This document shows, piece after piece, positions 110 through 60,590 of a stretch of 64,000 bases of DNA. A program made the position numbers and the translations under genes. The notes beneath the pieces are model-generated. The model was not told the DNA's origin and made no database searches. It saw nothing but the letters and a program-made list of their open reading frames with translations. The DNA is from Macrostomum lignano (lineage: Eukaryota). Each line of letters opens with the position of its first letter. Position 1 is the stretch's first letter. Where the stretch lies: assembly GCA_002269645.1 (NCBI GenBank), contig NIVC01001561.1, positions 1 through 64,000 of the forward strand, in the 5' to 3' direction.

Positions 110-1957
110 ATGGCGCATTCTCTGCCTGCCGATCAGCAGCAGCCGCCAGACCCGGACAACAGCGGCGCTATGCTCGACAGCGCCATTGAGCAGCCCTTGA
201 CATTCTCGTTTCCCGGCCTGCTCAAACTGGAGCTCAACCGTCGGCGATGGCGCCGACGGCATCTTCGTCGGTACACCCGTCCTGCTCGACTGCCGACGCC
301 TGCTGTGGAAGCCGCAGCCGCCAGGAGGCGGCCTCTGCGCCGCCTTGCCCTTGCCGCCGCCGCCTCCCCAGTCGCTTCCAGCACCTCAGCCAGCACAGAG
401 CAGCGAGCTGGCTTACCGTCAGTGGCTGACTCGGCGCTACCGCAGGCAGTTCCAGCCCTACTCGGAGGCTGGCGGCATGCCAAACCGGCTGTTCCTCGAC
501 CTGTTCAATCGGGTCGGCGCCGCCGGCGGCCGACGCCGCAAGCTGATTCGGCTGCTTCGGCGGGCGGACACGGACAGGAGCGGCCGGACCAGCTGGCCGG
601 ATTTCTACGCCGGCATGACCTACCGGATGCGGTCGGAGGTGGCGCCGGCCAAGCGGCTGGTGAACCGGCTGGTCCGCGCGGCCGATCCCGGGGTCGCCGC
701 GGCGGAACGGCGCCTCCGACAACGTCGAGTAGTTCGACGACGTCGACGACAACGACAGCAACAGCGGGGAAACGGCGGTGGCGGCGGCGGCGGGTCAGTT
801 CTGGTTGCTGACGAGCGAGACTTCGATGACGACGATGAACCCGGCGAGGTGCCCGAAGAGGCGTACATCGAGCTGTACAGATGCCACCCGCCGCCCGTGT
901 TCATCCCGCTGGCTCTGCTGGCTGTTTGGATCGGCTTCTGCGTCAGCGCGGTGCAGCTCAACGCCGGGCCCGCCTGGAACCGGGTCGGCTGGGCGTCCGG
1001 CCTGCCCTACAGCAGCCCGCTGGCCTTCTGCCCAGCCCGGCGGCACGAGGTGAGGAGCTGCTGACGATTACGGAGGTTAAAGACCCTCTGAGGGTGGCGG
1101 CATTTACTGAAGGGTATTCAGAGGGGTAGCGGAATTCACTGAAGGGTATTCAGAGGGGGTAGCGGCTACAAATGCATTCGATCAACACCCAGGTGTGGCG
1201 GTTCGCAACCTACTCTCTACTGCACGACGGCTGGCACCATCTGGTGTTCAACTCGCTGATGCTGCTGCTGCTGGGCCTGCCTCTGCAGCTGGCCCACGGC
1301 GGCCTTCGCGTAGGCGCCGTCATGTTAGGCGGCGTCCTGCTCGGCTCTCTGCTCTCCTCCGTCGCCGAGCCAAGCGCCGTTCTGATTGGCGCCGCCGGCG
1401 CCACCTACGCGCTAGTTGGGGCGCACATCGGCCTGGCGCTGGCCAACTGGGGCCAGTTAAGCGCCGAGTGGCACCAAATCACGGCGCCAACAACAGAATC
1501 AGGAGGCGGCAACTTGAAAACTGGCGGAGGAAAACTTCGCCAATTGTTGGCCTCCTCAATGCTGCGCCTGGCTCTGCTGGTCGGCTTCACTTACGCCGAT
1601 TTTGCCGTTGCGATTTACCAGCGGCACTGGCGCCGGTTTGCCATACTGGCTGGGGACAAGCATTGGCTGAGTCTGAGCTCCTACTGTGCTCAGCCTGCCG
1701 GCCTGGCCTGGGGCTGTCTGGTCGGCACCCAGCTGCTCAGCTTCGACCTGGATGACGACGGCGAAGGTGACGAGGACAGCGCTGAAAATGGCGGCAGACA
1801 GCGGAGACGCTGGTGCCAGCGCTGCCTGCTGAGAGTCAGTCTAGCAGGTTTTGCCGGCTTGGCCGCATTTGCGATTCTGTGGAATGTCTTCAACACCGGA
1901 TGGTATTCGGCTGCTGGCGGACTGGCCTGCGGAGGGGGGACTCGGCATGCTGGCTAG
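110..1957 (+). CDS. Rhomboid-family intramembrane protein with N-terminal EF-hand-like loop (RHBDL3/rho-4 type); predicted catalytically inactive
   Basis: Exons 110-1049 and 1193-1957 (GAG|gtgagg ... cccag|GTG). Rhomboid motifs RRHE|VWRF-TY-LLH-GW-HL-FN and GAAG (normally GASG); EF-hand-like DTDRSGRTSWPD. Exon 1 needs removal of one base near 235-240 to join the ATG at 110 to the frame of ORF 345. About 567 aa if corrected. Confidence 0.85.
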
Positions 1958-1960
1958 CTG

Positions 1961-2266
1961 AGGACTACTATTGTTGCTGGGGGCTGGCTACTGTTGCTAG
2001 GGCCTGGCTACTGTTGCTAGGGACTGGCTACTGTTGCTAGGGACTGGCTACTGTTGCTAGGGACAGGCTATTGTTGCGAGGAACTGGCTATTGGTTGCTA
2101 GGGACTGGCTATTGTTGCTAGGGCCTGGCTGTTGTTGCTAGGGACTGGCTATTGGTTGCTAGGGTCTGGCTAATGGTTGCTAGGGTCTGGCTACTGCTGC
2201 TAGGGCCTGACTACTGTTGCTAGGGTCTGGCTATTGGTTGTTAGGGGCTCGCTATTGTTGCTGGGG
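1961..2266. repeat. ~20-21 bp minisatellite (GGCTACTGTTGCTAGGGACT)
   Basis: About 14 units immediately after the rhomboid stop codon. Confidence 0.9.
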
Positions 2267-4238: not shown

Positions 4239-5466
4239 GCTTCACAATCCTTAAGCTTCACAATCCTTAAGCTTCACAATCCTTAAGCTTCAAAATCCTT
4301 AAGCTTCACAATCCTTAAGCTTCACGATCCTTAAGCTTCACAATCCCCAAGCTTCACAATCCCCAACCCCAAGCTTCACAATCCCCAAGCTTCACAATAC
4401 CCCAAGCTTCACAATCACCAAGCTTCACAATTCCCAAGCTTCACAATCTCCCAGCTTCACAATCCCCAACCCTAAGCTTCACAATCCCCAAGCTTCACAA
4501 TACCCCAAGCTTCACAATCCCCAAGCTTCACAATCTCCCAGCTTCACAATCTCCAAGCTTCACAATCCTTAAGCTTCACAATCCCCAAGCTTCACAATCC
4601 TTAAGCTTCACAATCCTCAAGCTTCACAATCCCCAAGCTTCACAATCTTTAAGCTTCACAATCTTTAAGCTTCACAATCCTTAAGCTTCACAATCCTTAA
4701 GCTTCACAATCCCCAAGCTTCACAATCCTAAAGCTTCACAATCCTTAAGCTTCACAATCCTTAAGCTTCACAATCTCCCAGCTTCACAATCTTCCAGCTT
4801 CACAATCTTTAAGCTTCACAATCCTTAAGCTTCACAATCCTTAAGCTTCACAATCCCCAAGCTTCACAATCCTAAAGCTTCACAATCCTTAAGCTTCACA
4901 ATCCTTAAGCTTCACAATCTCCCAGCTTCACAATCTTCCAGCTTCACAATCTCCCAGCTTCACAATCCCCAAGCTTCACAATCCCCAAGCTTCACAATCC
5001 CCAAGCTTCACAATCCCCATGCTTCACAATCCTTAAGCTTCACAATCCCCAAGCTTCACAATCCCCAAGCTTCACAATCCCCAAGCTTCACAATCCCTAA
5101 CTTTCACAATCCCCAAGCCTTACAATCCCCAACCCCAAGCTTCACAATCCCCAAGCTTCACAATCTCCAACCCCAAGCTTCACAATCCACAAGCTTCACA
5201 ATCCCCAAGCTTCACAATCCCTAACTTTCACAATCCCCAAGCTTTACAATCCCCAACCCCAAGCTTCACAATCCCCAAGCTTCACAATCTCCAACCCCAA
5301 GCTTCACAATCCACAAGCTTCACAATCCCCAAGCTTCACAATCCCTAACTTTCACAATCCCCAAGCTTCACAATCCCTAACTTTCACAATCCTTAAGCTT
5401 CACAATCCTCAAGCTTCACAATCCCCAACCCCAAGCTTTACAATCCCCAGGCTTCACAATCCCCAA
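4239..5466. repeat. 16-bp minisatellite (AAGCTTCACAATCCCC)
   Basis: About 75 units with CCCC/CCTT/CTCC variants. Confidence 0.95.
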
Positions 5467-6216: not shown

Positions 6217-7492
6217 TTACAATTCCCCAGCTTCACAATCCCCAAGCTTCACAATCCCCAAGCTTCACAATCACCAAGATTCACAATCCCCAAGCTTCAC
6301 AATCACCAAGATTCACAATCCCCAAGCTTCACAATCCCCAAGATTCAGAATCCCCAAGCTTCAGAATCCTCAAGCTTCACAATCCCCAAGATTCACAATC
6401 CCCGAGATTCACAATCACCAAGATTCACAATCACCAAGATTCACAATCACCAAGATTTACAATCTCTAAGATTCACAATCCTCAAGCTTCACAATCCTCA
6501 AGCTTCACAATCCTCAAGCTTCACAATCCGCAAGCTTCACAATCCTCAAGATTCACAATCACCAAGATTTACAATCTCTAAGATTCACAATCCTCAAGAT
6601 TCACAATCCGCAAGATTCACAATCCGCAAGATTCACAATCACCAAGATTCACAATCACCAAGATTCACAATCACCAAGATTTACAATCTCTAAGATTCAC
6701 AATCTCTAAGATTCACAATCACCAAGATTCACAATCCCCAAGCTTCAGAATCCTCAAGCTTCACAATCCCCAAGATTCACAATCCCCGAGATTCACAATC
6801 ACCAAGATTCACAATCACCAAGATTCACAATCTCTAAGATTCACAATCTCTAAGATTCACAATCCTCAAGCTTCACAATCCTCAAGCTTCACAATCCTCA
6901 AGCTTCACAATCCGCAAGCTTCACAATCCTCAAGATTCACAATCACCAAGATTTACAATCTCTAAGATTCACAATCCTCAAGATTCACAATCCGCAAGAT
7001 TCACAATCCGCAAGATTCACAATCACCAAGATTCACAATCACCAAGATTCACAATCACCAAGATTTACAATCTCTAAGATTCACAATCTCTAAGATTCAC
7101 AATCACCAAGATTCACAATCCCCAAGCTTCAGAATCCTCAAGCTTCACAATCCCCAAGATTCACAATCCCCGAGATTCACAATCCCCAAGCTTCACAATC
7201 ACCAAGATTCACAATCCCCAAGCTTCACAATCCCCAAGATTCAGAATCCCCAAGCTTCAGAATCCTCAAGCTTCACAATCCCCAAGATTCACAATCCCCG
7301 AGATTCACAATCACCAAGATTCACAATCACCAAGATTCACAATCACCAAGATTTACAATCTCTAAGATTCACAATCTCTAAGATTCACAATCACCAAGAT
7401 TCACAATCACCAAGATTCACAATCCCCGAGATTCACAATCCTCAAGCTTCACAATCCTCAAGCTTCACAATCCTCAAGCTTCACAATCCCAC
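6217..7492. repeat. 16-bp minisatellite of the same family (AAGATTCACAATCACC)
   Basis: About 80 units in the same orientation as 4239-5466. Confidence 0.95.
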
Positions 7493-8230: not shown

Positions 8231-8250
8231 TCAACGCCCGCCAGGCACAG

Positions 8251-11200
8251 ATGAGCGATCAAAGTTCGCCAGAGGCCGCATCGGCGGACTCCCCGGCCGC
8301 CGAGGAGAGATCCCCCCTGGCCCCTTTGTCGAGTGGCGGCGTTGGCGGCAATTCCACTGCGTCGAACGTCGCCCAAGACGACCCCGAATTCGAAGTCGAA
8401 GTCGCCGTTGACGAGCGAGAAAGCTGGGGCACGAAGATCGACTTTCTCCTGTCAATCATTGGCTTTGCCGTGGATTTGGCAAACGTGTGGCGCTTCCCCT
8501 ACCTGTGCTATAAATACGGCGGCGGGGCCTTCCTGCTGCCCTACTTCCTCATGAACATCTTTCAGGTGGCAACCGCTCGACTTTGAATCTTGCACTGATC
8601 TGTTCACTCCCTTCCCTCTCTTCACTCCCTTCCCTCCCTTCACTCCCTTCCCTCCCTTCACTCCCTTCACTGCATTCACTCCTTCCTCTCCCTTCACTCC
8701 CTACACTCACTTCACTCCCTTCACTCCCTTCACTCCTTCACTCCCTTCAGTCCCTTCACTCCCTTCAGTCCCTTCACTCCTTCCACTCCATTCACTCCAT
8801 TCACTCCCTTCACTCCCTCCACTCCCTTCACTTCCTTCACTACCCTCAATCCCTTCACTCCTTCCACTCCCTTCACTCCCTTCAATCCCTTCACAATCCC
8901 TTCCCTCACTACCCTCACTCCCTTCATTCCCTTCACTCCTTTCACTCCCCTCACTTCCTTCACTACCCTCACTCCCTTCACTTCTTTCACTCCCTTCACT
9001 ACCCTCGCTCCCTTCACTACCCTCACTCCCTTCACTTCTTTCACTCCCTTCACTACCCTCGCTCCCTTCACTACCCTCACTCATGGACCACTTGAAGCTA
9101 CCGTTGTATCAACAACTCGCCTCACTCCCTCCATTCACAGGCGGTGCCCCTGTTCTACATGGAGCTGGTGCTGGGCCAGGTGAACCAGCACGGCCCCATC
9201 CGAGTGTGGGACATCTGCCCTCTGGCCAGGGGCATCGGTCTGGCCCAGAACCTCATGACCTATCTGGTTGCATTCTACTACAACGTCATCATAGCTTGGT
9301 GCTTCTTGTTCTTATTCAACTCATTCTCAACGACCACTCTGCCCTGGATGAAGTGCGACAACGCATTTAATACGGAGTGGTGCGTCACGGTTGAGCAGTA
9401 CAAGAACCTTACTATGCAGAATCGGAGCGCCAAGTACGTTCTCGCATCTGAGGAATTCTTTGAGTGAGTTGTCAGTCTTGCTGTTGAACAGACTCTGTCA
9501 CCTGATCCTCTAGTGGGTCACCTGATCCTCTAGTGGGTCACCTGATTATCCAGTGGGTCACCTGATCCTCCAGTGGGTCACCTGATCCTCTAGTGGGTCA
9601 CCTGATCATCCAGTGGGTCACCTGATCCTCCAGTGGGTCACCTGATCCTCTAGTGGGTCATCTGATCATCCAGTGGGTCACCTCCTGATCCTCCAGTGGG
9701 TCACCTGATCCTCCAGTGGGTCACCTGATCCTCTAGTGGGTCATCTGATCATCCAATGGGTCACCTCCTGATCCTCCAGTGGGTCACCTGATCCTCTAGT
9801 GGGTCATCTGATCATCCAGTGTGTCACCTCCTGATAATCCAGTGTGTCACCTCCTGATCATCCAGTGTGTCACCTCCTGATCATCCAGTGTGTCACCTCC
9901 TAATCCTCCAGTGGGTCACCTCCTGATCATCCAGTGGGTCACCTCCTGATCATTCAGTGGGTCACCTCTTGATTTTCATATTAAACAGGTCAAACTTATT
10001 AGTGCAAGTGACCTGCAGCAATGTACATTCATAACCAACATTATATTGTCAACCAGCTCTCAACCTCCCGGAATTCGCATCTCGATTTCTCAGGCGCGGG
10101 GTCCTCGCCATCCACGAGAGCGTCGGACTGAGCAACCTGGGCCAGCCGCGCCTGCTGCTGGTGATCTGCTGCATGATCGTGTTCACCTGCTTGTACTTCT
10201 CCCTGTGGAAGGGAGTGAAGACCTCCGGCAAAGTGGTGTACATCACCGCCACAATGCCTTACATCCTGTTGTCCATCCTGCTCGTCAATGGGGCCAGACT
10301 GCCCGGTGCCAGCAAGGGCATAAAGTACTTTATTAACCCGGACCTGTCCAAGTTGAACTCTATCGATGTGAGTTCATTGGGGGACTTACTAAAGAATTGA
10401 TGCTGCTTGAGGACTTGAAACTTTAAATTTGAATCCTCCACCAACCCTCAAATGCTTCTCAAGCCTCATAGATTCACAAAGTTTAAAAATATTCCCGAAC
10501 CCGAAGATATTCATCAACTTCTTAAATGGTTCAAGAAAACTAAAAAGATTCACCGAACCAACAAAGGTTCACCGACCCTAAGAAGATTCACCAAACCCTA
10601 AGAAGATTCACAAAACCCTAGAAAGATTCACAAAACCCTAGAAAGATTCACCAAACCCTAAGAAGATTCACCAACCCCTAAAAATATTCACCAAACCCTA
10701 GAAAGATTCACCAAACCCTAAGAAGATTCACCAAACCCTATTAATATTCACCAAACCCTAGAAAGATGCATCAATTATAATAATTTTTTATTATCTTCTC
10801 CCCTCTCTTCTCACCTTTCTTTTCTGCCCTCTCTCATCCCTACCCTTTTCACATATTCTCTTTTCTCAAACTGTACATTGATCTCCATCTGGTCACTAAG
10901 ATGTCACTAAAAACAAAATGAAGCAGTGAGAAATTCCTCACACAGCCTTGGATCGAGGCGGCAATCCAGGTGTTCTACTCAACAGGCGCCGGCTTTGGCG
11001 TCCACCTGTCCTACGCCAGCTACAGCCGGCCGAAGAACAACTGCTACCGAGACTGCCTCATCACTGCGGCCGCCAATGCGGCTGCCAGCTTCCTAGCCGG
11101 TTTTGTTGTGTTCTCCTACCTGGGATACATGTCCGAGATCACTGGGAAACCGGTGGATCAGGTCACTGCTGAGGGTAATTAACTTGCTAAAATTATGTTA

Positions 11201-14200
11201 CGTGTATCTAATCTGGGGCATACCGTACTTGAGAATTGCTATTTTAGGAATAAAGCCAAGGCAGAATTGATTTGAACCAATCAGTGAACCAGTGACCTTG
11301 AGATCAAGATAAATATGTATATGATAAGAAAGGTTACAGCCAATCAACGACGTTTGACCTTGAAATAAGACACAGTACTTCGGGTCTTAAAATTGAATGC
11401 TGCAGGCTACCTGACGTCCCACAGCCAGCTCTGACGGCAATGCTGCCCGTTCCGCTGGCTCCTGAGCACACACAAGTGCCCCAATGCTGTACGCAGGCAC
11501 GCACTCATACACTCGCTCACACAGGGTGTACAGCGGCCCTTTGACTTTCCTATCGTCAGGCATGTACACTCTCTGTGTCTTTGGGGCTGAGTGTGAGTCG
11601 CACGATAACGCAGAACGAGAAGTCAATTATTAAAAAAAATTGTTTTGTACTTTTTTCCACAGGACCCGGTCTGGTCTTCCAGGTCTATCCGATAGCGATT
11701 GGCACCCTGCCAGTGGCGCCTCTATGGTCAATCCTGTTCTTCTCCCTGCTCATCACGCTGGGGCTGGATAGTGCGGTAAGGATCCGCGCGCTCAAGAATC
11801 TCTGGCAGACAGATGAACTTCATCAGCCTATTGTAGTCTGTTAAAGTGGAGGATATAAGGAGAGGTCGCAGAAGCACTATTGCCAATGTCAGGTGGAAGA
11901 TTTCAAGCTTCTAGGCCAATATCACACTCGCTTGCAAACCTTTTAACATTCAACACTAGGATGAAATGCTTTTAGCAAATATTTCTTTCAATTTAAAGAG
12001 AAGGCGAGGACCTTAAAAATGCCTTAAATTGAGAATTGCATTGACATTTAGAAAGTCACTGTAAGGCTTGTGTATTGGCCTGTTGAAGAGATAAACAATG
12101 CATACGCATATTTAAACAATTTGAATTCATTTTTGTCATATTGAATATACTGAAAGCCCAAGTAATCAAGATTAATTTCATAATTCTCCCCAGATGGGCG
12201 GCATGGAGTGCCTACTGACTGGCGTCGGCGATCTCATTGAGAAGCCTCTGCGTCGCTACAAAAATGTTCGCGAGATTTTCACCGTCTGTGTGATCGTGTT
12301 CGCCTTCTTCATGTCAATCTTTTTGTGCACCCAGGTAAGTTGCTATTCCGGCTGCGGTTAATTTTTTTCGCGATGACTGGAGTATATTCAATATTTTATA
12401 ACGTCAATTGAATCAATCAACGACAAGTGACCCTGAGAAACAGGAGACAAATGACCTTAAGTAATCCACGGTTTGTTGGACCCCTGCATGGAACCTGTTA
12501 TTTGGATTATTCCATCCAATCGGCGACAAGTGACCTTGAGGAATACACGGTTTGTTGGTCCCCTGCATAGAAATATGCTATTTGGAATATTCTAGCCAAT
12601 CGGCGACAAGTGACCTTGAGGAATACACGGTTTGTTGGTCCCCTGCATAGAAATATGCTATTTGGAATATTCTAGCCAATCGGCGACAAGTGACCTTGAG
12701 GAATGCACGGTTTGTTGGTCTCCTGCATAGGAATCTGCTATTTAGCATAATCTAGCCAATCAGCGACAAGTGACCTTGAGGAATACACAGCTTGTTGCCC
12801 CCGCCCCTCCTGAGAATAGATGTACAACCTGGATGAGTCTAGTAAAAAAAGTGACCTTGAGAAATGGCCTTGAATCATGTAGGCACCTATTTGCGTTATA
12901 AGTCACGCGATCATTCCGCAGGGAGGCATGTACATCTGGAATTTATTGAACAATTTCTCGGCTGGTTTGTCCATTATTGTTGTGGCTTTTTCTCAGGCAA
13001 TTGCAGTCTCTTGGTTCTACGGTAAGTGTGCTTTAATCATTTTTATGCTATTAGCAATTCTACTAAGCATTATTGATTTTACGAAGCTAATTTATTCTAT
13101 TTTTCCTAACCTTGCCGAAGGCTTGGATCAGTTCTGCAAAGATATTAAGGATAATCTGGGATTTTCGCCCGGAATATTTTGGCGCCTGTGTTGGAAGTTT
13201 ATCTCGCCTGTTTTTATTCTGGTGAGTCACTGAGAAAGTGAGGGTGTGAAGGAGAGTAAAGGAGAGTTAGTAAGGGTGAGGGAGAGTGGAGAAGAGTGAC
13301 AGAGTGGATGAGAGTGCAGGAGAGTGGGGGAGATTGACAGAGAGTAAGAGAATGGAAGAGAGTGAGGGACAATGAGGGAGAGTGAGGGACAATGAAGGAG
13401 AGTGAGGGACAATGAGGGAGAGTGAGGGACAATGAGGGAGAGTGAGGGACAATGAGGGAGAGTGAGGGACAATGAGGGAGAGTGAGGGACAATGAGGGAG
13501 AGTGAGGGACAATGAGGGAGAGTGAGGGACAATAAGGGAGAGTGAGGGACAATAAGGGAGAGTGAGGGACAATAAGGGAGAGTGAGGGACAATGAGGGAG
13601 AGTGAGAGACAATGAGGGAGAGTGAGGGACAATGAGGGAGAGTGAGGGACAATGAGGGAGAGTGAGAGACAATGAGGGAGAGTGAGGGACAATGAGGGAG
13701 AGTGAGAGACAATGAGGGAGAGTGAGGGACAATGAGGGAGAGTGAGGGACAATGAGGGAGAGTGAGAGACAATGAGGGAGAGTGAGGGACAATGAGGGAG
13801 AGTGAGGGACAATGAGGGAGAGTGAGGGACAATGAGGGAGAGTGAGAGACAATGAGGGAGAGTGAGGGACAATGAGGGAGAGTGAGAGACAATGAGGGAG
13901 AGTGAGGGACAATGAGGGAGAGTGAGGGACAATGAGGGAGAGTGAGAGACAATGAGGGAGAGTGAGGGACAATGAGGGAGAGTGAGAGACAATGAGGGAG
14001 AGTGAGGGACAATGAGGGAGAGTGAGGGACAACACAATAGGTCTTAACTAAATATCAAAAGTACTAATTCAGGGTCCTACGAGCGTATTTACTGTATGTT
14101 TACGCAAAACTATCATTAAGACGAAAAGAAAAGTACAAAATTCAGAAGCACTATGCAAACAAAAGCAGAAAACATGTTGTTATTTGAAAAAGCATTATTT

Positions 14201-15809
14201 AAATTCCAGGTGATCATTGTGTTCAACATTGTCATACTGATGGATTCGTCGAGTTTTCTGTACTTTTACAAGTACACCGAGTACCATCCCGAGCTGTTCG
14301 CTAATCGCACCGAGGGTAATAATTATTTCTATTTTTATCCCACCGGAGGCAAACTGATCGGCTGGGGCATCTGCGCGATCCAGCTGGGCATGATTCCGGC
14401 CTTGGCTGTGTACGCTATCGTGTCCTACAAAGTAAGCCTCTCCTGCAGATAATAGCCAACCCCCACACTTGGTACCTCTGACGCACAGTTTAATGCGTCT
14501 GACACCAACTTTTATGCCCCTGATAGTCAGTTTTGGTGTCCTGACATCCCAGTTTTGGTGTCCTGACATTCCAGTTTTGGTGTCCTGACATTCCAGTTTT
14601 GGTGTCCTGAAATCCCATTTTTGGTGACGTGAAATCCCATTTTTGGTGACGTGAAATCCCAGTTTTGGTGTCCTGAAATCCCATTTTTGGTGACGTGAAA
14701 TCCCATTTTTGGTGACGTGAAATCCCATTTTTGGTGACGTGAAATCCCAGTTTTGGTGTCCTGTCATTCCAGTTTTGGTGTCCTGTCATTCCAGTTTTGG
14801 TGTCCTGACATTTCCAGTTTTGGTGTCCTGTCATTCCAGTTTTGGTGTCCTGTTATTCCAGTTTTGGTGTCCTGTCATTCTAGTTTTGGTGTCCTGACAT
14901 TCCAGTTTTGGTGTCCTGTCATTCTAGTTTTGGTGTCCTGTCATTCCAGTTTTGGTGTCCTGACATTTCCAGTTTTGGTGTCCTGACATTCCAGTTTTGG
15001 TGTCCTGACATTTCCAGTTTTGGTGTCCTGTCATTCCAGTTTTGGTGTCCTGTCATTCCAGTTTTGGTGTCCTGTCATTCCAGTTTTGGTGTCCTGTCAT
15101 TCCAGTTTTGGTGTCCTGACATTTCCAGTTTTGGTGTCCTGTCATTCCAGTTTTGGTGTCCTGTCATTCCAGTTTTGGTGTCCTGTCATTCCAGTTTTGG
15201 TGTCCTGTCATTCCAGTTTTGGTGTCCTGACATTTCCAGTTTTGGTGTCCTGAAATTTCCAGTTTTGGTGTCCTGTCATTCTAGTTTTGTTGAAATGACA
15301 CCCCAGTTTTGGTGACCTGTTACTCCAGTTTTGCTGACCTGACACCCCAGTTTTGCTGACCTGACACCCCAGTTTTGGTGTCATGACATCCGGCCAGTCA
15401 AATGCTTCTGTCACAAGTTGTTTCGGTGATTCTGACACCCTGTTTGGCGCCACAGACACCTAGTTACATGAAGGTGCAACAGGCTATTAGATTGAATTCC
15501 CTGACACACCTCTGACTCAACAATTGTAAAAAACTTCAACCAGAGTCTGGCGAAGGCCATCACTCCGATCCGCGATCACCGGTTGGTGGATTCGGTCACG
15601 TGACTCGCTACACCATCCGCCATTGGCTGTCCCTGGGACCAATGGACACTTTCCCATTGGACCTGATCCACCGGGCTTGGTCTAAGCGTCGCCATGGCAA
15701 CAAGAGCAACGCCAACGCGTCCGAAGCCGAGGATGGAGACGGCAACCACAAAGCATCGGAGAGCTACCCGATGACTGGAAGCTCGAAAGTAGTTGATGAA
15801 GATGGCTGA
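8251..15809 (+). CDS. SLC6 sodium:neurotransmitter symporter, catecholamine (dopamine/noradrenaline) transporter-like
   Basis: Exons 8251-8565, 9141-9463, 10094-10367, 10946-11174, 11663-11775, 12194-12334, 12922-13021, 13121-13221, 14210-14431, 15544-15809; all GT-AG with consistent phases. Motifs [29 protein letters not shown] (TM1 Asp of monoamine transporters), [19 protein letters not shown] (DAT/NET type) and C-terminal RHWL. One-base discrepancy in the last exon near 15593. Confidence 0.93.
8602..9135. repeat. 9-bp pyrimidine-rich minisatellite (CACTCCCTT)
   Basis: Fills SLC6 intron 1. Confidence 0.9.
9498..9968. repeat. 19-22 bp minisatellite (CACCTGATCCTCCAGTGGGT)
   Basis: About 23 units in SLC6 intron 2. 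Confidence 0.9.
10540..10765. repeat. 20-bp minisatellite (AAGATTCACCAAACCCTARG)
   Basis: About 10 units in SLC6 intron 3. Confidence 0.85.
11400..11590 (-). mobile_element. Diverged SINE family A core fragment
   Basis: Shares CACAGAGAGTGTACATGCC...GGGCCGCTGTACAC-CTGTGTGAG...GTGCCTGCGTAC...GCTCAGGA with the full copies. Confidence 0.6.
12410..12800. repeat. 80-bp tandem repeat, ~4-5 copies
   Basis: CRGCGACAAGTGACCTTGAGG recurs at 12521, 12601, 12681, 12761. Confidence 0.9.
13228..14032. repeat. 20-bp purine-rich minisatellite (GAGGGACAATGAGGGAGAGT)
   Basis: About 38 units starting at the exon 8 donor. Confidence 0.95.
14528..15382. repeat. 22-23 bp minisatellite (CCAGTTTTGGTGTCCTGTCATT)
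   Basis: About 38 units in the last SLC6 intron. Confidence 0.95.
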
Positions 15810-19601: not shown

Positions 19602-41363
<21,762 letters not shown>

Positions 41364-43269: not shown

Positions 43270-46200
43270 ATGGGTCTAACACTGACCAAAGCCGCTGATT
43301 GGTTGGACAATAGTAAGCTAGACTTCAGCCCATCCAACCAGATCATCCTGACTGACATTCTCAAGGCGGTCGATGGCTACTCGAAAAACAATCCAATCGG
43401 TGGCAAGATGAAGTTTAGCGAGCCTCTTGTCTGGGACTCCACGTTGAAGTTCGAGGACTTTAAAAAGACCGAAAGATTCCCCGAGACGTGAGTTGAAGAA
43501 TACCGTGTACTTTCTGAAATAGCTATCGAACCTAGAACCCAGGTTTAAGCGCACTTGAACCTAGAAGTGATCACCTCAGCAGTTGCTGAGCATAAACAGT
43601 TCGCTTTTCCAAGGAGTTTTTTGCCTTCACAGGGAATCCGAGAACACCCTTCAACTGGACGAGCTGCTCACGGTGACTAAGCAGGAGTCGGAGGTAGCGC
43701 ACGTTGAGTGCCACAGCTTCGACATGCTGCAGCTGGTTTTGGACGCCTGCCGGAGCAAGAAGACGGCCGAAGTTCGCGCCTGCTTGGAAGGTAGGCTTGA
43801 GAGTGTGCTTAGAATGCTGAGAGCTTCTATTTGAAATAGCTGCAGTTACCAAACATATAAACTGATTGATATTGAGGATGTGCAGCACTTGCTTACTGAA
43901 AACGCATTGCATTGCCATTTCTAGGCAACTCGGACCCGGTGTCGAAGATCCTTGGCAATCGCTACGCATGCAACACTGAAGACGACGTTGAGTTCTACAA
44001 GCAAGCGGAGGAGGACCTGCAAGGCGAGGACATCACCTACGAGGAGTTTGAGACTAAGAAGGTTGTACTGAAGATGGCGATGGAATTTCACAACTTGGAC
44101 GTTCGAATGCTGCGCAGCGTGCAGGGACTGATGTCGAAGTAAGATTTTAAACGGATTCGCTACTCAAAGTGCTGCAGGAGGTTAGTAGTACACCCGAATA
44201 TTGTTAACAATATCCACACCGTCCGCTTGCAGGGATTCCCGCCTGTCGCCGCGACTCGTTGAAGCCGAATTCGACTGCCTGAAGGAGCTGTCGGGCTCCG
44301 AGGATGAACAGCCGCTGCGCGATATTGAGCCGGTGCCCTGTGAGTTACAGCTTGAGAGCACTGTGAAATTAGCTGATCTGTGGAATTGAATAGTAGTAAA
44401 GTGCGCATATTGTGTTCTAAATGATGCGATCCGATTTGACGATGTAGCTCCATGGCCTCAAACGAACGATACAGGATGTAGACAATCGAATGGACGAATG
44501 AATCCAGTATGGATTCAAGACCAATTAGAATATTGGTCTTGAAATAGATGGCAAATCATGGCAAAGTTTAAGTACCAGAGAACGATCTACTATAGTGACC
44601 TTAGCTTAATACCACCAGGAAGCAAAGGTCCATAGACAGAGGAAGTACTCACACCAAGCGCTCTACGCATCGTCCGCTTTGCAGGCTACGTTCATGTGTT
44701 CAGCAACGGCTACCGGGCCCCGAATTTTCGCCAGCTGCAAGGCGACATCGCCTACTTTCTGGTGTACTTGAAGGACACCGACGTTATTTGCGTGACCGCC
44801 GGCACCAAGGGCTGGTTCGTCAACAAGGTAGGTTTCTGCTTTGCGTCGATAAATACATAAAAACGAAATATTAATACTAAACGTGTGACCCCATACGCTC
44901 CCGATCGTAACTGTCTGATTGTGATTACCGACCTCGGAACATTCTCACTGCAGGGCTATAGCAAGGACACGAACGACGTTGATTTCGAGCGCCGCTCCGA
45001 CCTCTACGGCAGCCTGTTTGCCCTGCTGCGCGAGCGGAGCCGCTACTTCCGCGAGCGGACCAGCAGAAAAAGCGGCGACGGCGAGACGGCTGCCGACGAG
45101 GCTGCCGATGGAGCCGAAAAGCCGGATCAGGAGGGCGACGCGGATCAGCAGGCGGCCAGGGAGGAGGCGGAGGAGCGCAAAAAGGACCCGACCCTGCGCT
45201 GGGTCAGCCTCGGCACCAGCGAGCAGCAGAGCCAGGAGCGTCGGAGCGCCCGTCAGCCCCAGTCTGCGGCCGCAGCTGCTCAACAGTCGGACGAGAGCGA
45301 CTCCGAGTCCGGCACCGATGAGGAAGAAGACGCAGTGGAACGGCGACACGAGAGCAACGCGGACCTGCCGAGCGAGTACTGGCAAATCGGCAAGTTTGTC
45401 CGCTACCTGAAGGGCGGCAACCAGACAAGCACAATTATTTCGCTGTGCGCCCTGCGCGACTTCCAGCTCAACACTGAGGTCTGCCAGCTGGCCATCCGCG
45501 ATGTTGGCGGCCTTGAGGTGCTGCTCAACTTGCTGGAAACGGAGGAAAACCGCTGCAAGATCGGCTCGCTGAAGATCCTGAAGGAAATCTCGCAGAATCC
45601 GCAGATCCGCCGGGCAATAGCCGACCTTGGCGGCCTGCAGACGCTGGTGAATATCCTGAAAGAACCCAGCAAGGATCTGAAATGCCTGGCAGCCGAGACC
45701 ATTGCCAACGTGGCCAAGTTCCGTCGGGCCAGACGGATCGTACGTCAGCACGGCGGCATCCGCAAGCTCGTGTCGCTGCTTGATTGTCCGGCCCTGAACG
45801 GGCCAACCTCGCCGGAGATTGAGCGCGACATTGAGGTAGCCCGCTGCGGCGCCCTGGCCCTCTGGTCTCTGAGCAACTCTACCAAGAACAAGCGCGCAAT
45901 GAAACGGGCTGGAGTGATCCCTCTGCTCGGCAAGCTGCTGAAGTCGCGCCACGAGGACATGCTGATCCCGGTTGTTGGCACCCTGCAGGAGTGCGCCTCC
46001 GAGCCCGACTACCGCGTGGCCATCCGCACCGAGGGCATGGTTGAGGATCTGGTGAAGAACCTCAAGAGCGATAATGCCGAACTGCAAATGCACTGCGCGT
46101 CCACCATTTTCAAGGTGAATTTTTGTTTATTCCCTAATTCCGGGATCGACTATTTGGTACTACAAGTCCCCTCGAAAAAACATTTCAGTGCGCTGAAGAA

Positions 46201-49200
46201 GAGGAAACCCGAGATCTCGTCCGCTCCTACGACGGCCTGGAGCCGATGGTCGGCCTGCTCAACAAAACGGACAACAAAGAGCTGCTGTCGGCGGCTACCG
46301 GAGCCATTTGGAAGTGCTCAATGTCGTCTAAAAATATTCGGAAGTTCCAGGAGCTCAACGTTATTGAGAAGCTGGTCCGGCTGCTCAGCGACCAGCCAGA
46401 GGAGGTGAGTAGCAGTCAAATGCGTGTGTGAGCAAGGACTACCAACTAGAAAGTCTCCTTAGTGGGGCTATTCTCAGAAAAATAAATGACTAAAAGTATT
46501 ACATGCATTTCTATAAGCCGAATGCAGCACGAATCGAGGATGCATCTAAAAAGAACAACCCCATTTTACTATCATAATCGATAACAGAAACCCCCTGCTT
46601 TGTGTTGCTTTGCTTTCATCCTGACATTTATTAAGCTATAGCGTATATAGCCATATGAGTCTAAGCCTGCTTTTATAACTCTGTTTTCTGTTGATAATGC
46701 TTTGCAGTGCTTTTATTCCATATTAGTTCAAACCAAGACTCTGCAAGTGTGCATCCTCCCGCTCTATGAAATATGACTCAAAACATTATTCTAAACATTG
46801 CAGCAATGGGAACCAGTTGGATCCTATCACAGGCCTCCATATGTAACCAATGTCAACAGCATGTTTGCTTGCTTGTCCTGCATTTCCTATCGCCAAATCA
46901 TTAACATGCTTAAAGTACACCAAACGGAGGTGTACTGTATGCGGAGAATTCACACAGTTTAGGAATCGCATGCTACTGTTTTACCCCACTCACTGCATTC
47001 GCCATTTCTCCTTGTTGCATGAAAACTTTTGCATTTCATTATTGCATTATTATATGGTAAACCATTTATTCTAACCATACTACTGACCTGCTAGATAATC
47101 AAGTTGTTTGAGTTGTTGGGAGAGAAAGAAATTACGGGGAAATGCTTGCACAATGGTTATAAAATTTTTCAGAACAGATGGTGGAGCATGGACCCGGATT
47201 TGTTGCTGACCTCTCTGGGTTACAATGTGTGTCATTCAGGAGATCACCAAATTTACCCATATTTTGCACCAAAATTTCAAAATCACCTCGATCACCTTTA
47301 CCCCGAATATTTCTTTGAAATTCAAATTTTAACTCAGCTCTGCTCTGTACACTTCCACTGCATGCCCAGTTGATAGCCATTATCACTGTGGCTCTGCAAA
47401 ACCGAGGAAGTTAAGAATATAAAACAAAGAACCTGCTTTACTAACTGGAGTTTTACTTTCACGAGGTGGTCACCTACCTGCTAATCAATACCAATCTATC
47501 AGCCTAAACACAGCTTAAGAACCGCGGTAACAGACTGTTTCACTAAGCCTCTCGCCTCCCCCCGAAGTTATGAGAGCGACGACTTTTGATATTTCACTTA
47601 AATTAATCACGACAACCTTTGCATGCTGTAGACAGTGCATGTTAGAATGATTCATCCAGCTATTTGAGAAGTCATGAGAGACGGACGGTAGTAGACGAGA
47701 AGGATAAGAAAGACAGTAGTCCATGAATAAGACAGTAGTCCATAAGAAAGACAGTAGTCCATAAGAAAGACAGTAGTCCATAAGAAGACAGTAGTCCATG
47801 AGAAGACAGTAGTTCATGATAAGACAGTAGTCCATGAGAAGACAGTAGTCCATGAGAAGACAGTAGTCCATGAGAAGACAGTAGTCCATGAGAAGACAGT
47901 AGTCCATGAGAAGACAGTAGTCCATGAGAAGACAGTAGTCCATAAGAAGGACACGAAGACCATAAAAAACAGTAGTCAACGAGAAAGACAGTACCGAATA
48001 ATGACGCACCGGAGACACGGCATGAAGAGAAAGACAAAGCACTCCGCCTCCTTCCCTTCCCCCTCCTCCTCAGGTCCTCGTCAACGTAGTCGGCGCCCTC
48101 GGCGAGATGGCGGCAGAGAAGGAGAATCGGCACGCTATTCGCAAGGCCGGTGGCATTGGTCCCCTGGTGCAGCTGCTGACGGGCACCAACCAGGCTCTGT
48201 TGGTGAACACTACCAGAGCCGTTGGCCGCTGCGCCCAAGAGAAAGAGAACATGGCCATCATCGACAGAATGGATGGCGTCCGGCTGCTGTGGTCGCTGCT
48301 GAAGAACCCGAACCCGGAGGTGCAGGCCAGCGCCGCCTACGCAATCTGTCCGTGCATCGACAACGTCAACGACGCTGGCGAGATGGTCAGATCCTACGTT
48401 GGTGGCCTCGAGCTCATCGTGCACCTGCTCAGATCGGACAACATCAAGGTAAGCCTGGGGGGTCGCAAACTCCCAGACCTGCTACCCAATCGTAAAAGAA
48501 TGGACTGGAGCTCAGCTTAATTTTGCCACTCGCTTTAACGTTAGTTGCCTTGAAACGGTGACGCAAAGGCGTCTGACTCTCGCGCAGCGAGCCCTGCTTT
48601 GATTCCGTGCACAGACGAAGTTCATTTGAGGCTTGTGCATGAAAAATTGGCCGGAATGTATCATGGGATATCAAGGGAAGTCTTCCACTCTACGCAGGTG
48701 CTCGCCGCAATCTGTGCGGCTGTCGCCAGCATCGCCAAAGACGAAGAGAACCTCGCCGTTCTGACCGACCACGGCGTCATTCCCCTGCTTGCCGGCCTGA
48801 CGCGCACCCAAGACGAGGAGTTGAAGCGGCACCTGTCTGAGGCCATCGCTTGCTGCTGCGCCTGGGGCAACAACAGGATTGTGTTCGGCAAGGAGGGCGC
48901 CGTGGCGCCGCTCGTGTCTTACCTGCGCGTAAAGGTGAGCGCTGAGTTGGCTTATTCTACAGTACCTAATAGATGAGATTGCTTTAGCCTCATGGGAGGT
49001 TAAATTAAGTTACGTATATTTCACTAGTGGTCGTTCCATGAGTATCTTTATGACGTCATTCTGTTCCCGAAAGAGGTCATTCTGCCCTCGTTGATATTAC
49101 ACTATTTTTTATGGATAGTGCGGTCACTCTATCCGCTTTGAAGAGGCCACTCTATATACTCTAGGGAGACGTCAGAATATCCCTCAGTTTCCTGACCTGA

Positions 49201-58770: not shown

Positions 58771-59564
58771 GCCGAGCAGCTGGGTGAGTTTTATTCTGAT
58801 CAAACTTGAGCAACTCCGCGTTCAGTAGACAGTTGATATTTAAGCCTTAAGCCTTAGGCTTCTTCGCACAGGATTTTATAGCCTGTTTTAGTGGGGAACA
58901 AGGCCGGACCAATAGGAGATCAGCTTAGGGCCCTTAGAGCCGCCAGTCTGGGAAAATCCTCACGCGCTCCCGTGGAACCCAAAACCGCTGGCCTCAGAGG
59001 CGTCTTCTTTTTCGCCTCATCAAAATTTTCCCCACCTCTCCAATGCGTCTCCATAGAAGACAAATACAATGGAAGAGAAACGGCAAGGTGAGATGCCCCC
59101 AGCTGCTCAAAACACTCACATGAGTTATCCCGCCAGCAGAATTGAAAGATGCAGTCGGGTCGGATTTCCAAAGCCTCTGCCACCAGCCACCTCTGGCAGT
59201 CTTTTTTTCTAAATCGATTATTCCGGTGCTTGGAAAATCGAACCCGCACTGCCTCTGTTTAGCCAAGCGGGGTAGCATGTTGGCCTCAGTCAGAACTCGA
59301 AAAACAACCAATTTATGTTCAATATTATTCCATCCACAATTGGGGTCGTTAAGGAGTCTGTATTACCTCGCGAGAGAAATTCTTTCCCACGCAAAGGCAA
59401 TTTGAATCTTTTGTGCATGGGAGCTCTTTCATTTATCGATTGTACATTTGGTACTGCATGCGCGAACTGGGCCTGTCGCCTCTCTCAAACACCAGACTTT
59501 GGTATGCCTGCACTTTCTGTGTTCTCCTAACCGTCCGACTGCGCTCTGCTTCAAGTTTCTCTCA

Positions 59565-60590
59565 GGGGCGATTCTCTCAAGGGCGATTCTCTTAAGGGCG
59601 ATTCTCTCAAGGGCGATTCTCTTAAGGGCGATTCTCTTAAGGGCGATTCTCTCAAGGGCGATTCTCTCAAGGGCGATTCTCTCAGGGGCGATTCTATCAG
59701 GGGCGATTCTCTCAGGGGCGATTCTATCAGGGGCGATTCTATCAGGGGCGATTCTATCACGGACGATTCTCTCAGGGGCGATTCTATCAGGGGCGATTCT
59801 CTCAGGGGCGATTCTATCAGGGGCGATTCTATCAGGGGCGATTCTCTCAGGGGCGATTCTATCAGGGGTGATTCTCTCAGAGCGATTTTTCAGCGGCAAT
59901 TCTATCAGGAGAGATTCTATAAATGGGCGATTTTCTCGGGGTAATTTTCTCAAGGGTGATTCTCTTGTGAGTGATTCTCTCATGGGTAATTCTCTCAGGG
60001 GTGATTCGCTCATGGGTAATTCTCTCAGGGGTGATTCTCTCATGGGTAATTCTCTCAGGGGTGATTCTCTCATGGGTAAATCTCTCAGGGGTGATTCTCT
60101 CATGGGTAAATCTCTCAGAGGTGATTCTCTCATGGGTAAATCTCTCAGGGGTGATTCTCTCATGGGTAAATCTCTCAGAGGTGATTCTCTCATGGGTAAA
60201 TCTCTCAGGGGTGATTCTCTCATGGGTTAGTTCTCTCAGGGGTGATTCTCTCATGGGTAAATCTCTCAGGGGTGATTCTCTCATGGGTAAATCTCTCAGG
60301 GGAGATTCTCTCATGGGTTAGTTCTCTCAGGGGTGATTCTCTCATGGGTAAATCTCTCAGGGGTGATTCTCTCATGGGTAAATCTCTCAGAGGTGATTCT
60401 CTCATGGGTAAATCTCTCAGAGGTGATTCTCTCATGGGTAATTCTCTCAGGGGTGATTTTATCAAGAGCGATTCTCTTAAGGGGCGATTTTCTCGGGGCG
60501 ATTTAATCAGGGGGCGATTCTCTCAGGGCGTGTCTCTCGGGGGCGATTCTATATCTAAGGCGATTTTTATCCCAGAGATGATTCTCTTAT
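59565..60590. repeat. 15-bp minisatellite (GGGCGATTCTCTCAG) with 30-bp dimer blocks
   Basis: Upstream of the K2P gene; 30-bp higher-order unit GGGGTGATTCTCTCATGGGTAAATCTCTCA at 59970-60450. Confidence 0.95.

What the first reader, a model, noticed from the sequence alone, without database searches (positions are those of the whole stretch)
1385..1700. Secretase-type rhomboid missing both catalytic residues: a non-iRhom pseudoprotease
Seen: TM4 reads LIG-A-A-GATYAL (GCC Ala at 1394-1396 replaces the nucleophilic Ser of GASG), and TM6 reads SYCA-Q-PAGLAWG (CAG Gln at 1691-1693 replaces the catalytic His). The L1-loop WR motif, the H--H---N motif and an EF-hand-like N-terminus remain. Known: the Ser-His dyad is essential, and iRhoms carry GPx plus a large Cys-rich iRhom homology domain, neither of which is present. 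Inference: an independently evolved, possibly Ca2+-regulated rhomboid pseudoprotease that could bind or chaperone membrane clients.
Basis: partly seen in the sequence, partly recalled or inferred. Interest (0 to 1): 0.7.

Follow-up and report, generated by a model that had tools for sequence, protein, structure and literature searches.

The report
Catalytically dead flatworm rhomboid gene
A two-exon gene of the flatworm Macrostomum lignano (or a very close relative) encodes a rhomboid membrane protease of the RHBDL type that has lost both catalytic residues but otherwise looks intact; it adds one lineage-specific case to the known class of "dead" rhomboids, and whether it still has a job is unproven.

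Summary
Codon 1394-1396 (GCC, Ala) sits at the nucleophilic Ser of GxSG. Codon 1691-1693 (CAG, Gln) sits at the TM6 His. Both columns are invariant in 42 active homologs.

The gene has two exons (about 372-1049 and 1193-1957) split by a canonical GTGAGG...CAG intron. It encodes a 6+1 TM rhomboid whose nearest relatives are RHBDL1/2/3-type secretases. It has no iRhom Pro and no iRhom homology domain.

The window matches a frame-scrambled UniRef model from Macrostomum lignano. That species also has at least two RHBDL paralogs with intact dyads.

Apart from the active site, the protein keeps 37 of 43 family-conserved positions, the same count as two active homologs on equally long branches. Its codon-position GC pattern looks coding, and it models as a rhomboid fold.

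The "EF-hand" loop is degenerate and gets no Pfam hit, so Ca2+ regulation is unsupported. The 5' start is unresolved, and I found no transcript or close ortholog. A live pseudoprotease (about 0.55) therefore cannot be separated from a young relic (about 0.3).

Side result: cyclophyllidean tapeworms lost the same dyad independently, and their gene is under purifying selection (dN/dS 0.13).

Lineage-specific dead rhomboids are already known (C. elegans ROM-3/4/5), so this is a new member of a known kind.

The parts
372..1049 (+). Exon 1 coding part (frame 3): cytoplasmic N-terminal region, TM1 and most of the L1 loop. The frame is open from about 198, and homology to relatives starts at about 393-402.
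   Evidence: tblastn of flatworm RHBDLs hits 393/402-1049 in frame 3. The exon ends ...CAC GAG | GTGAGG.
110..112 (+). Candidate ATG in a different frame (frame 2) from the rest of exon 1. The true start is unresolved.
   Evidence: Frame 3 has no ATG between the stop near 195 and 477, yet homology begins upstream of 477. Options: a short intron (e.g. 305-371, 67 nt), an SL-donated ATG at acceptor CCCCAG|372 (the SL ends in ATG; PMC8629364), an exon upstream of the window, or a real frameshift.
567..602 (+). Degenerate EF-hand-like loop DTDRSGRTSWPD.
   Evidence: It aligns with DANRDGRITYEQ/DLNQDGRISYQE of relatives. No Pfam EF-hand hit at E <= 10, unlike P0158, P0160, P0013 and P0162.
708..794 (+). 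Low-complexity Arg/Gln/Gly linker (RRLRQRRVVRRRRRQRQQQRGNGGGGGGG), lineage-specific.
900..959 (+). TM1.
   Evidence: Hydropathy; AlphaFold helix 15-35 of the core model.
1050..1192 (+). Intron, 143 nt, phase 0, GTGAGG...CCCAG. It contains a 32-bp tandem repeat (1092-1165).
   Evidence: The splice motifs match the M. lignano consensus GT[G/A]AG / CAG (PMC8629364). Joining the exons gives ...ARRHE|VWRF..., continuous with homologs.
1193..1957 (+). Exon 2: end of L1 (WR), TM2-TM7, stop TAG at 1955-1957.
1196..1201 (+). L1 WR motif, retained.
   Evidence: Invariant columns W and R.
1223..1252 (+). TM2 HxxxxHxxxN (HDGWHHLVFN), retained.
1388..1420 (+). TM4 motif GAAGATYALVG. Ala (GCC, 1394-1396) replaces the nucleophilic Ser, and the following GG becomes GA.
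   Evidence: columns 697 and 699.
1679..1726 (+). TM6 SYCAQPAGLAWGCLVG. Gln (CAG, 1691-1693) replaces the catalytic His, and GxxxGxxxG is retained.
   Evidence: column 849.
1835..1891 (+). TM7, the extra C-terminal helix of the 6+1 secretase topology.
   Evidence: Hydropathy; AlphaFold helix 261-297.
1968..2266 (.). 20-bp minisatellite starting 11 nt after the stop codon. By eye, the last ~15 codons of the CDS look like degenerate copies of its unit; this was not tested.

Best explanation
The locus encodes a 6+1 TM rhomboid-fold membrane protein. It derives from an RHBDL1/2/3-type (secretase B, EF-hand-bearing) intramembrane serine protease.

Shown: the nucleophilic Ser is Ala and the general-base His is Gln. 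Established rhomboid enzymology says it therefore cannot perform serine-protease catalysis.

Shown: the scaffold that positions and gates a transmembrane substrate is kept. This covers the L1 WR motif, TM2 H/N, the TM4 glycines, Tyr after the Ser position, TM6 GxxxGxxxG and TM7.

Inferred: the protein is still made and acts as a natural substrate trap. It would bind transmembrane clients of the active M. lignano RHBDL paralogs, such as EGF-like ligands, without cutting them. It would thereby sequester, traffic or compete for them, much as iRhoms and laboratory Ser-to-Ala rhomboid mutants do.

Its EF-hand is probably no longer a Ca2+ sensor. The loss arose within the Macrostomum lineage, independently of iRhoms and probably independently of the tapeworm loss (see the Against line).
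For: - Codons and alignment are confirmed.
- Family placement: Pfam Rhomboid 71 bits. The best relatives are all RHBDL-type, e.g. Lingula and Haliotis 'rhomboid-related protein 2'.
- Fold: AlphaFold model pLDDT 74, pTM 0.78 with 7 TM helices. The top 34 PDB fold matches are all rhomboid-family (iRhom1/2, GlpG).
- Constraint pattern: 37 of 43 columns that are >= 85% conserved in 42 active homologs are retained. Two active homologs on similarly long branches score the same 37 of 43 (P0010 of M. lignano, and P0039). The six changes include both dyad residues and the Gly after the Ser. The chance that both dyad residues fall among six random hits in 43 columns is 0.017.
- Overall divergence is only slightly above the family median (42.7% against 47.1% mean identity in TM1-4).
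- Coding signature: GC by codon position is 70/53/75%, and exon GC (63-70%) matches other coding stretches of the window (60-67%) against 45% in the 3' flank.
- The ORF is open over 480 codons across a canonical phase-0 intron. My estimate of about 2.5% stop codons per random codon at this base composition gives P of about 4e-6 for that by chance.
- Active paralogs that could supply clients exist (P0009, P0010).
- Precedent in the same phylum: tapeworm RHBDLs that lost the His (and, in Taenia, the Ser) evolve at dN/dS 0.13.
Against: - There is no evidence of expression. No protein close to this one exists among about 15 billion database proteins, which include Logan run assemblies, except one frame-scrambled genome-derived model.
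- The 5' end is broken or unresolved: the only upstream ATG is in another frame.
- No close ortholog could be found, so neither the age of the losses nor dN/dS for this gene is known.
- Each catalytic change is a single-nucleotide step from a Ser (TCC) or His (CAY) codon, so both could be recent.
- The gene carries low-complexity insertions, a degenerate EF-hand and a 3' end abutting a minisatellite.
- It sits on the second-longest terminal branch of the tree (0.625), although the active M. lignano paralog P0010 is also long (0.515).
- Its closest full-length matches are in fact the tapeworm RHBDLs, Mesocestoides (212 bits) and Spirometra (201 bits) in BLASTP without composition adjustment. 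With the weak tree support, an orthologous relation to that clade is not excluded.
Confidence: 0.55

Rival explanations
1. Young non-functional relic. A duplicated RHBDL gene became redundant alongside at least two active paralogs in a duplicate-rich, hidden-polyploid genome. It lost catalysis recently and is drifting towards pseudogenisation; the ORF is still open only because little time has passed.
For: - The start codon and reading frame are discontinuous at the 5' end.
- No matching transcript-derived protein exists in the large collections.
- The EF-hand is degenerate.
- Low-complexity expansions and an adjoining minisatellite are present.
- The terminal branch is long.
- Both catalytic changes are one-step mutations.
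- Active paralogs are present.
- M. lignano is described as a hidden polyploid (abstract of PMC10468722).
Against: - The gene is only 30-40% identical to every other rhomboid, including the two known paralogs of the same species. It is therefore an old lineage that was long maintained, not a recent WGD copy.
- It shows normal retention of non-catalytic conserved residues (37 of 43, the same count as two active homologs on similarly long branches), no stop in 480 codons, intact splice sites and coding-type GC periodicity.
- Several hits at the active site (Ser, the neighbouring Gly, His) while the rest stayed conserved suggests continued selection on the scaffold after the first loss.
Confidence: 0.3
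2. Sequencing or assembly artefact: the real gene has Ser and His, and the frame problem at the 5' end is an indel error.
For: - GC-rich, repeat-flanked sequence is error-prone.
- The 5' frame discontinuity could be a 1-nt indel.
- The older M. lignano model of this locus is full of frame errors.
- The analogous Taenia solium case was once attributed to 'inaccurate sequencing' (PMC4070553).
Against: - Two separate base substitutions (not indels) would be needed at exactly the two catalytic codons.
- The older assembly's model carries the same SYCAQ and the same DNA reading across GAAG.
- The neighbouring G>A and the invariant Glu>Gln changes fit real divergence.
- The Taenia case turned out to be real in five species.
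Confidence: 0.04
3. Still an active hydrolase that uses non-canonical residues, e.g. Thr in GAAGAT or the His in the L5 insertion (KHW).
For: The oxyanion-hole-type residues (TM2 His/Asn) and the Tyr after the Ser position are retained.
Against: No rhomboid is known to work without the TM4 Ser / TM6 His dyad (the PLoS Biology 2004 paper PMC519001, cites Urban et al. 2001 for this). The candidate substitutes lie outside the aligned catalytic positions.
Confidence: 0.02

Closest known systems
RHBDL1/2/3-type secretase rhomboids (Drosophila Rhomboid-4 and vertebrate RHBDL types with N-terminal EF-hands)
   Same: - They are the closest sequence relatives (40-46% identity over TM1-TM4).
- Same 6+1 TM topology.
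- Same WR, HxxxxHxxxN, Tyr after the Ser position and TM6 GxxxGxxxG.
- A homologous N-terminal EF-hand-pair region.
   Different: - Ser>Ala and His>Gln at the dyad.
- GG>GA after the Ser position.
- The invariant TM2 Glu is Gln.
- The EF-hand loop is degenerate.
- Extra loop insertions between TM4/5, TM5/6 and TM6/7.
iRhoms (RHBDF1/2, Drosophila Rhomboid-5)
   Same: Catalytically dead derivatives of secretase-type rhomboids with 7 TM helices. They are the best structural matches to the model. The proposed mode of action, client TMD binding without cleavage, would be analogous.
   Different: - No Pro before the Ser position (GAAG, not GPxx).
- No Cys-rich iRhom homology domain; L1 is about 30 residues.
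- The TM6 His, which iRhoms keep (PMC7065720), is lost here.
- Sequence affinity is to RHBDL, not to iRhom (9o58 iRhom2 E = 0.92).
Lineage-specific 'other inactive rhomboid homologues', e.g. C. elegans ROM-3/-4/-5
   Same: Seven-TM rhomboid-like proteins outside the iRhom and Derlin families that lack the catalytic triad (PMC519001; category described in PMC7065720).
   Different: Different phylum and an independent origin. None of them is a sequence neighbour of the window protein in my searches.
Cyclophyllidean tapeworm 'Rhomboid-related protein 2' (Taenia solium KAL5965265, Echinococcus granulosus, Hymenolepis, Hydatigena)
   Same: - Flatworm RHBDL-type protein with an N-terminal EF-hand region and a long linker.
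- TM6 His lost (Leu/Ile/Thr), and in Taenia and Hydatigena the Ser is lost too (Gly).
- A Pro follows the former His position, as in the window protein.
   Different: - Probably a separate loss event: Spirometra and Mesocestoides in the same clade keep Ser and His.
- The window protein does not group with this clade in the tree or in reciprocal BLAST, though the evidence is weak.
- The tapeworm gene has measured purifying selection (dN/dS 0.13), whereas the window gene has none measured.

Membership tests
Rhomboid-like superfamily (Pfam PF01694 fold) | Significant match to the Rhomboid domain profile | tested here: met
   PF01694 E = 1.2e-19, 71.4 bits against a cut-off of 22.6. Only profile positions 2-99 of 143 (TM2-TM4) align.
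Rhomboid-like superfamily (Pfam PF01694 fold) | Six-helix core with L1 WR, TM2 HxxxN and TM6 GxxxG | tested here: met
   All are present at invariant alignment columns. The AlphaFold model (pTM 0.78) matches iRhom1/2 and GlpG and nothing else significantly.
Active rhomboid protease (MEROPS S54), secretase B / RHBDL type | Nucleophilic Ser in TM4 GxSG | tested here: not met
   Ala (GCC, 1394-1396) at a column that is Ser in 42 of 42 active homologs and aligns with the GlpG nucleophile.
Active rhomboid protease (MEROPS S54), secretase B / RHBDL type | General-base His in TM6 | tested here: not met
   Gln (CAG, 1691-1693) at a column that is His in 42 of 42 active homologs.
Active rhomboid protease (MEROPS S54), secretase B / RHBDL type | 6+1 TM topology and closest similarity to RHBDL1/2/3 | tested here: met
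   TM7 at 1835-1891. The best hits are named rhomboid-related protein 1/2/3.
Active rhomboid protease (MEROPS S54), secretase B / RHBDL type | Cleaves transmembrane substrates | not testable with these tools
   Needs a cell-based or reconstituted cleavage assay.
iRhom | Pro immediately before the former Ser position (GPxx) | tested here: not met
   The motif is GAAG.
iRhom | Large Cys-rich iRhom homology domain between TM1 and TM2 | tested here: not met
   L1 is about 30 residues (AGPAWNRVGWASGLPYSSPLAFCPARRHE) with one Cys.
iRhom | Sequence affinity to RHBDF1/2 | tested here: not met
   iRhom2 chain 9o58_B scores only E = 0.92 by sequence. No iRhom appears among the hits whose names I looked up.
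Functional EF-hand Ca2+ sensor domain | Canonical 12-residue loop recognised by EF-hand profiles | tested here: not met
   No Pfam EF-hand family hit at E <= 10 for residues covering 372-722. Relatives P0158, P0160, P0013 and P0162 hit EF-hand_1/5/7 at 2e-5 to 4.5e-4, still below Pfam's own cut-offs. The loop is DTDRSGRTSWPD (Thr at position 8, Asp at position 12).
Rhomboid pseudoprotease (functional dead enzyme) | Catalytic residues absent while the gene is expressed and under purifying selection | tested here: inconclusive
   Absence of the dyad is shown. Indirect signs of constraint exist (37 of 43 conserved positions, open ORF, coding GC pattern). No expression data, orthologs or dN/dS could be obtained.

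The most novel reading that the evidence does not exclude
RHBDL-type secretase rhomboids have been converted into retained pseudoproteases at least twice within flatworms: once in Macrostomum (this gene) and once in cyclophyllidean tapeworms (dN/dS 0.13 after loss of the His). On this reading, the Macrostomum protein is a live, iRhom-like regulator that arose independently from an EF-hand-bearing secretase. It would act as a natural substrate trap that tunes EGF-type ligand release in a regeneration model organism.
Probability: 0.3. Interest if true: 0.55.

Novelty: new member of a known kind. Interest (0 to 1): 0.35.

Why it matters
If the gene is live, it would be a second, independent route from secretase rhomboid to pseudoprotease, alongside iRhoms. 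It sits in M. lignano, a laboratory flatworm with published genome and transcriptome resources and, to my knowledge, working RNAi and transgenesis. What a dead rhomboid scaffold does on its own (client trapping, trafficking, competition with active paralogs) could therefore be tested there.

The parallel tapeworm case shows that such proteins can be kept for long periods. It also settles an old doubt: the "missing active site" in the single Taenia solium S54 member is real, not a sequencing error.

If the gene is only a decaying duplicate, the finding is ordinary.

Tried and rejected
- Homology searches. The full-length query was swamped by low-complexity words and returned only the frame-scrambled M. 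lignano model. A third search with exon 2 alone returned nothing. No Macrostomum orthologs were obtained.
- Exact look-ups. The exon-2 ORF and P0001 are not on record with DNA, so no second DNA copy was available for dN/dS.
- Orthology to the tapeworm dead-rhomboid clade. I first suspected it from shared loop insertions, the EYRQW N-terminus and the Pro after the His position. I rejected it as unsupported: the NJ tree gives only a weak (52%) pairing with an unrelated active Logan transcript (P0039), and in reciprocal BLAST the tapeworm proteins prefer the active M. lignano paralog P0009.
- Localised relaxation of TM5-TM7 relative to TM1-TM4. There is no signal (ratio 0.61 against a median of 0.66).
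- A second rhomboid copy or alternative TM4/TM6 exons in the window. None found.
- Resolving the 5' end. 36 stop-free GT..AG candidate introns exist and none is compelling. The apparent resemblance of frame-2 'EQPLTFSFPG' to tapeworm N-termini did not appear among tblastn hits at E <= 1.
- Unusual GC content as a sign of something special. Other coding stretches in the window are equally GC-rich.
- Pfam hits such as Collagen, Extensin and Toxin_trans on other window ORFs are minisatellite artefacts.
- Lemberg & Freeman 2007 could not be read and is cited only through PMC7065720.
Full report
**What is at the coordinates**

Window 1385-1420 reads ATT GGC GCC GCC GGC GCC ACC TAC GCG CTA GTT GGG, which translates to IGAAGATYALVG. 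Window 1679-1714 translates to SYCAQPAGLAWG. Codon 1394-1396 is GCC and codon 1691-1693 is CAG.

The surrounding sequence is a eukaryotic two-exon gene. A frame-3 ORF runs to 1049 and ends CAC GAG | GTGAGG. A 143-nt intron ends CCCAG at 1192. Exon 2 (1193-1957) continues in phase to a TAG stop. The splice motifs match those reported for Macrostomum lignano, GT[G/A]AG and CAG (PMC8629364).

The joined protein is a rhomboid. Pfam PF01694 scores E = 1.2e-19, 71 bits against a cut-off of 22.6, although only TM2-TM4 of the profile align.

**Organism**

The only near-identical database entry is UniRef A0A1I8JQ84 from M. lignano (P0001). It is a frame-scrambled gene model that begins MAHSLPA like the window. 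It contains SYCAQ and the +1-frame reading of the GAAG stretch. Its C-terminal SLC6-transporter part maps to window 8244-9233. The window is therefore M. lignano or a very close relative, and both catalytic-site readings recur in another assembly.

**Are the two residues really the catalytic positions?**

- Ser position: phmmer aligns the window's GAAG with GlpG's GLSG, placing the second Ala on the nucleophile.
- His position: in an alignment with 42 active RHBDL-type homologs, the Ala column is Ser in all 42 and the Gln column is His in all 42. The Gln column is fixed by three invariant TM6 glycines that the window keeps.
- Among the 150 best hits from a HMMER scan of 1.8 billion representatives, almost all show GASGG and AHxxG.

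**Family placement**

The closest named relatives are 'rhomboid-related protein 1/2/3' proteins of lophotrochozoans and vertebrates, at 40-46% identity over TM1-TM4.

The protein has seven TM helices. A core AlphaFold model (pLDDT 74, pTM 0.78) matches only rhomboid-family structures: iRhom1/2 first, then GlpG.

It is not an iRhom. The motif is GAAG rather than GPxx, L1 is about 30 residues with no Cys-rich domain, and the TM6 His that iRhoms keep is gone (PMC7065720).

M. lignano also has at least two RHBDL paralogs with intact dyads: P0009 (A0A1I8H955) and P0010 (A0A1I8GEZ3). No second copy or alternative exon lies in the window.

**The EF-hand**

The N-terminal region is homologous to the EF-hand pair of relatives, but the loop is DTDRSGRTSWPD. 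No Pfam EF-hand family hits it even at E <= 10. Four flatworm relatives give EF-hand hits at 2e-5 to 4.5e-4. Ca2+ regulation is therefore not supported.

**Live gene or relic? Signs of constraint**

- The protein keeps 37 of 43 columns that are at least 85% conserved in active homologs. That is the same count as P0010 (the active M. lignano paralog) and P0039 (an active Logan transcript).
- The six changes are Q>L, the invariant TM2 E>Q, Y>M, the catalytic S>A, the G>A right after it, and the catalytic H>Q. The chance that both dyad residues are among six random hits in 43 columns is 0.017.
- Mean identity to the family is only slightly below the median.
- GC by codon position is 70/53/75%. 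Exon GC equals that of other coding stretches in the window.
- The frame is open for 480 codons.

**Live gene or relic? Signs against**

- No ATG lies in frame 3 upstream of 477, although homology starts at about 393-402. The only upstream ATG (110) is in frame 2.
- Possible fixes are a short intron such as 305-371, an SL-donated ATG at the in-frame acceptor CCCCAG|372 (the M. lignano spliced leader ends in ATG), an exon outside the window, or a true frameshift.
- No transcript-derived protein resembling this one turned up in the large collections.
- The gene carries Arg/Gln/Gly and acidic low-complexity insertions, and it abuts a 20-bp minisatellite 11 nt after the stop.
- It has the second-longest terminal branch in an NJ tree, 0.625. 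The active paralog P0010 is also long at 0.515.
- Each catalytic change is one nucleotide step away from a Ser (TCC) or His (CAY) codon.

I could obtain no ortholog or second DNA copy, so I have no dN/dS for this gene.

**A parallel case found on the way**

A profile search recovered a tapeworm RHBDL clade.

| Species | TM4 Ser position | TM6 His position |
|---|---|---|
| Spirometra, Mesocestoides, one Logan transcript | GSSGG (Ser kept) | His kept |
| Hymenolepis | Ser kept | Thr |
| Echinococcus | Ser kept | Ile |
| Taenia solium, T. asiatica, Hydatigena | Gly | Leu |

The genomic codons confirm them: AGC and ATA in Echinococcus, GGC and CTA in T. solium. T. solium against E. granulosus gives dN/dS 0.13 overall and 0.17 in the rhomboid core. 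This is a pseudoprotease under purifying selection.

A 2014 survey had noted that the active site of the single T. solium S54 member could not be located and suspected sequencing error (PMC4070553). The five-species comparison shows that the loss is real.

The window protein is not demonstrably orthologous to this clade. The tree pairs it weakly (52%) with P0039, and in reciprocal BLAST the tapeworm proteins prefer P0009. Because basal tapeworms keep the dyad, the Macrostomum loss is most likely a separate event.

**Mechanism**

Shown: the protein cannot carry out Ser/His catalysis, and it retains the substrate-positioning scaffold.

Inferred: if it is expressed, it binds transmembrane clients without cutting them. 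That would make it a natural equivalent of the Ser-to-Ala substrate-trap mutants and functionally analogous to iRhoms. It could sequester or traffic ligands, or compete with the active paralogs.

I put this at about 0.55, a young non-functional relic at about 0.3, an assembly artefact at about 0.04 and residual activity at about 0.02.

**Novelty**

Rhomboid-like proteins outside the iRhom and Derlin families that lack catalytic residues are an established category. Lemberg & Freeman 2007 describe it (as cited in PMC7065720), and C. elegans ROM-3/4/5 are examples (PMC519001). A full-text search found no paper on rhomboids in Macrostomum.

The finding is therefore a new member of a known kind. 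Its added interest is that the same conversion happened elsewhere in flatworms, in tapeworms.

Noticed in passing
Related loci L002 (Taenia solium MIEF01007774.1) and L003 (Echinococcus granulosus CM038620.1); proteins P0013, P0151, P0156-P0160: Cyclophyllidean tapeworm RHBDL orthologs lost the catalytic His (Hymenolepis Thr, Echinococcus Ile, Taenia/Hydatigena Leu). Taenia and Hydatigena also lost the Ser (Gly). Spirometra and Mesocestoides keep both. T. solium against E. granulosus gives dN/dS = 0.13, so this is a conserved pseudoprotease. A 2014 paper (PMC4070553) put the missing active site down to possible sequencing error.
   Followed up: partly
window 110-477: The 5' end of the rhomboid CDS is unresolved. 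ATG 110 is in frame 2 and the homologous coding frame is frame 3, with no ATG before 477. The acceptor CCCCAG|372 would be in frame with an ATG donated by the M. lignano spliced leader. TTCCAG|382 fits the trans-splice motif better but is out of frame.
   Followed up: partly
window 1968-2266, 2709-2951, 4239-5466, 6219-7490, 8603-9082, 13358-14032, 14528-15389, 21847-22838, 25603-26494, 32155-36445, 52386-53640, 59557-63137: The window is packed with minisatellites, mostly of 14-22-bp units. Examples are a 14-mer x310 at 32155-36445 and (CCAA)n x313 at 52386-53640. One array starts 11 nt after the rhomboid stop codon. Many long 'ORFs' and the Pfam hits to Collagen, Extensin, GETHR and Toxin_trans are artefacts of these repeats.
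   Followed up: partly
window 8244-8484 and 9135-9233 (+): Exon-like fragments of an SLC6 / sodium:neurotransmitter symporter gene lie about 6 kb downstream. The old UniRef model A0A1I8JQ84 fuses them to the rhomboid and carries the misleading name 'Protein kinase domain-containing protein'. A 9-bp array (8603-9082) lies between the fragments.
   Followed up: no
window 44885-46408 (+) and 55013-56320 (-): Two further probable genes. One is an Armadillo-repeat protein ORF (Pfam Arm, E = 3e-21). The other is a two-pore-domain K+ channel-like ORF (Ion_trans_2, E = 6e-18).
   Followed up: no
L001 (Logan DRR639055 contig, 2789 nt), gene 449-1348: This is an active rhomboid (P0039, 299 aa, GASGG / AAHVGG) of unknown organism. 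It shares the unusual TM2 string TYS.LHDG.HHL with the window protein and pairs with it weakly in the tree. It could be the nearest active relative or a long-branch artefact.
   Followed up: partly
L002 around 2310-2340 (Taenia solium): The annotated T. solium protein has a 16-residue insertion (QAAQKMTTTLSTTTIG) exactly where the Echinococcus gene has an intron (FLVHQ|GIWH). This is probably a mis-called splice donor in the T. solium annotation.
   Followed up: no
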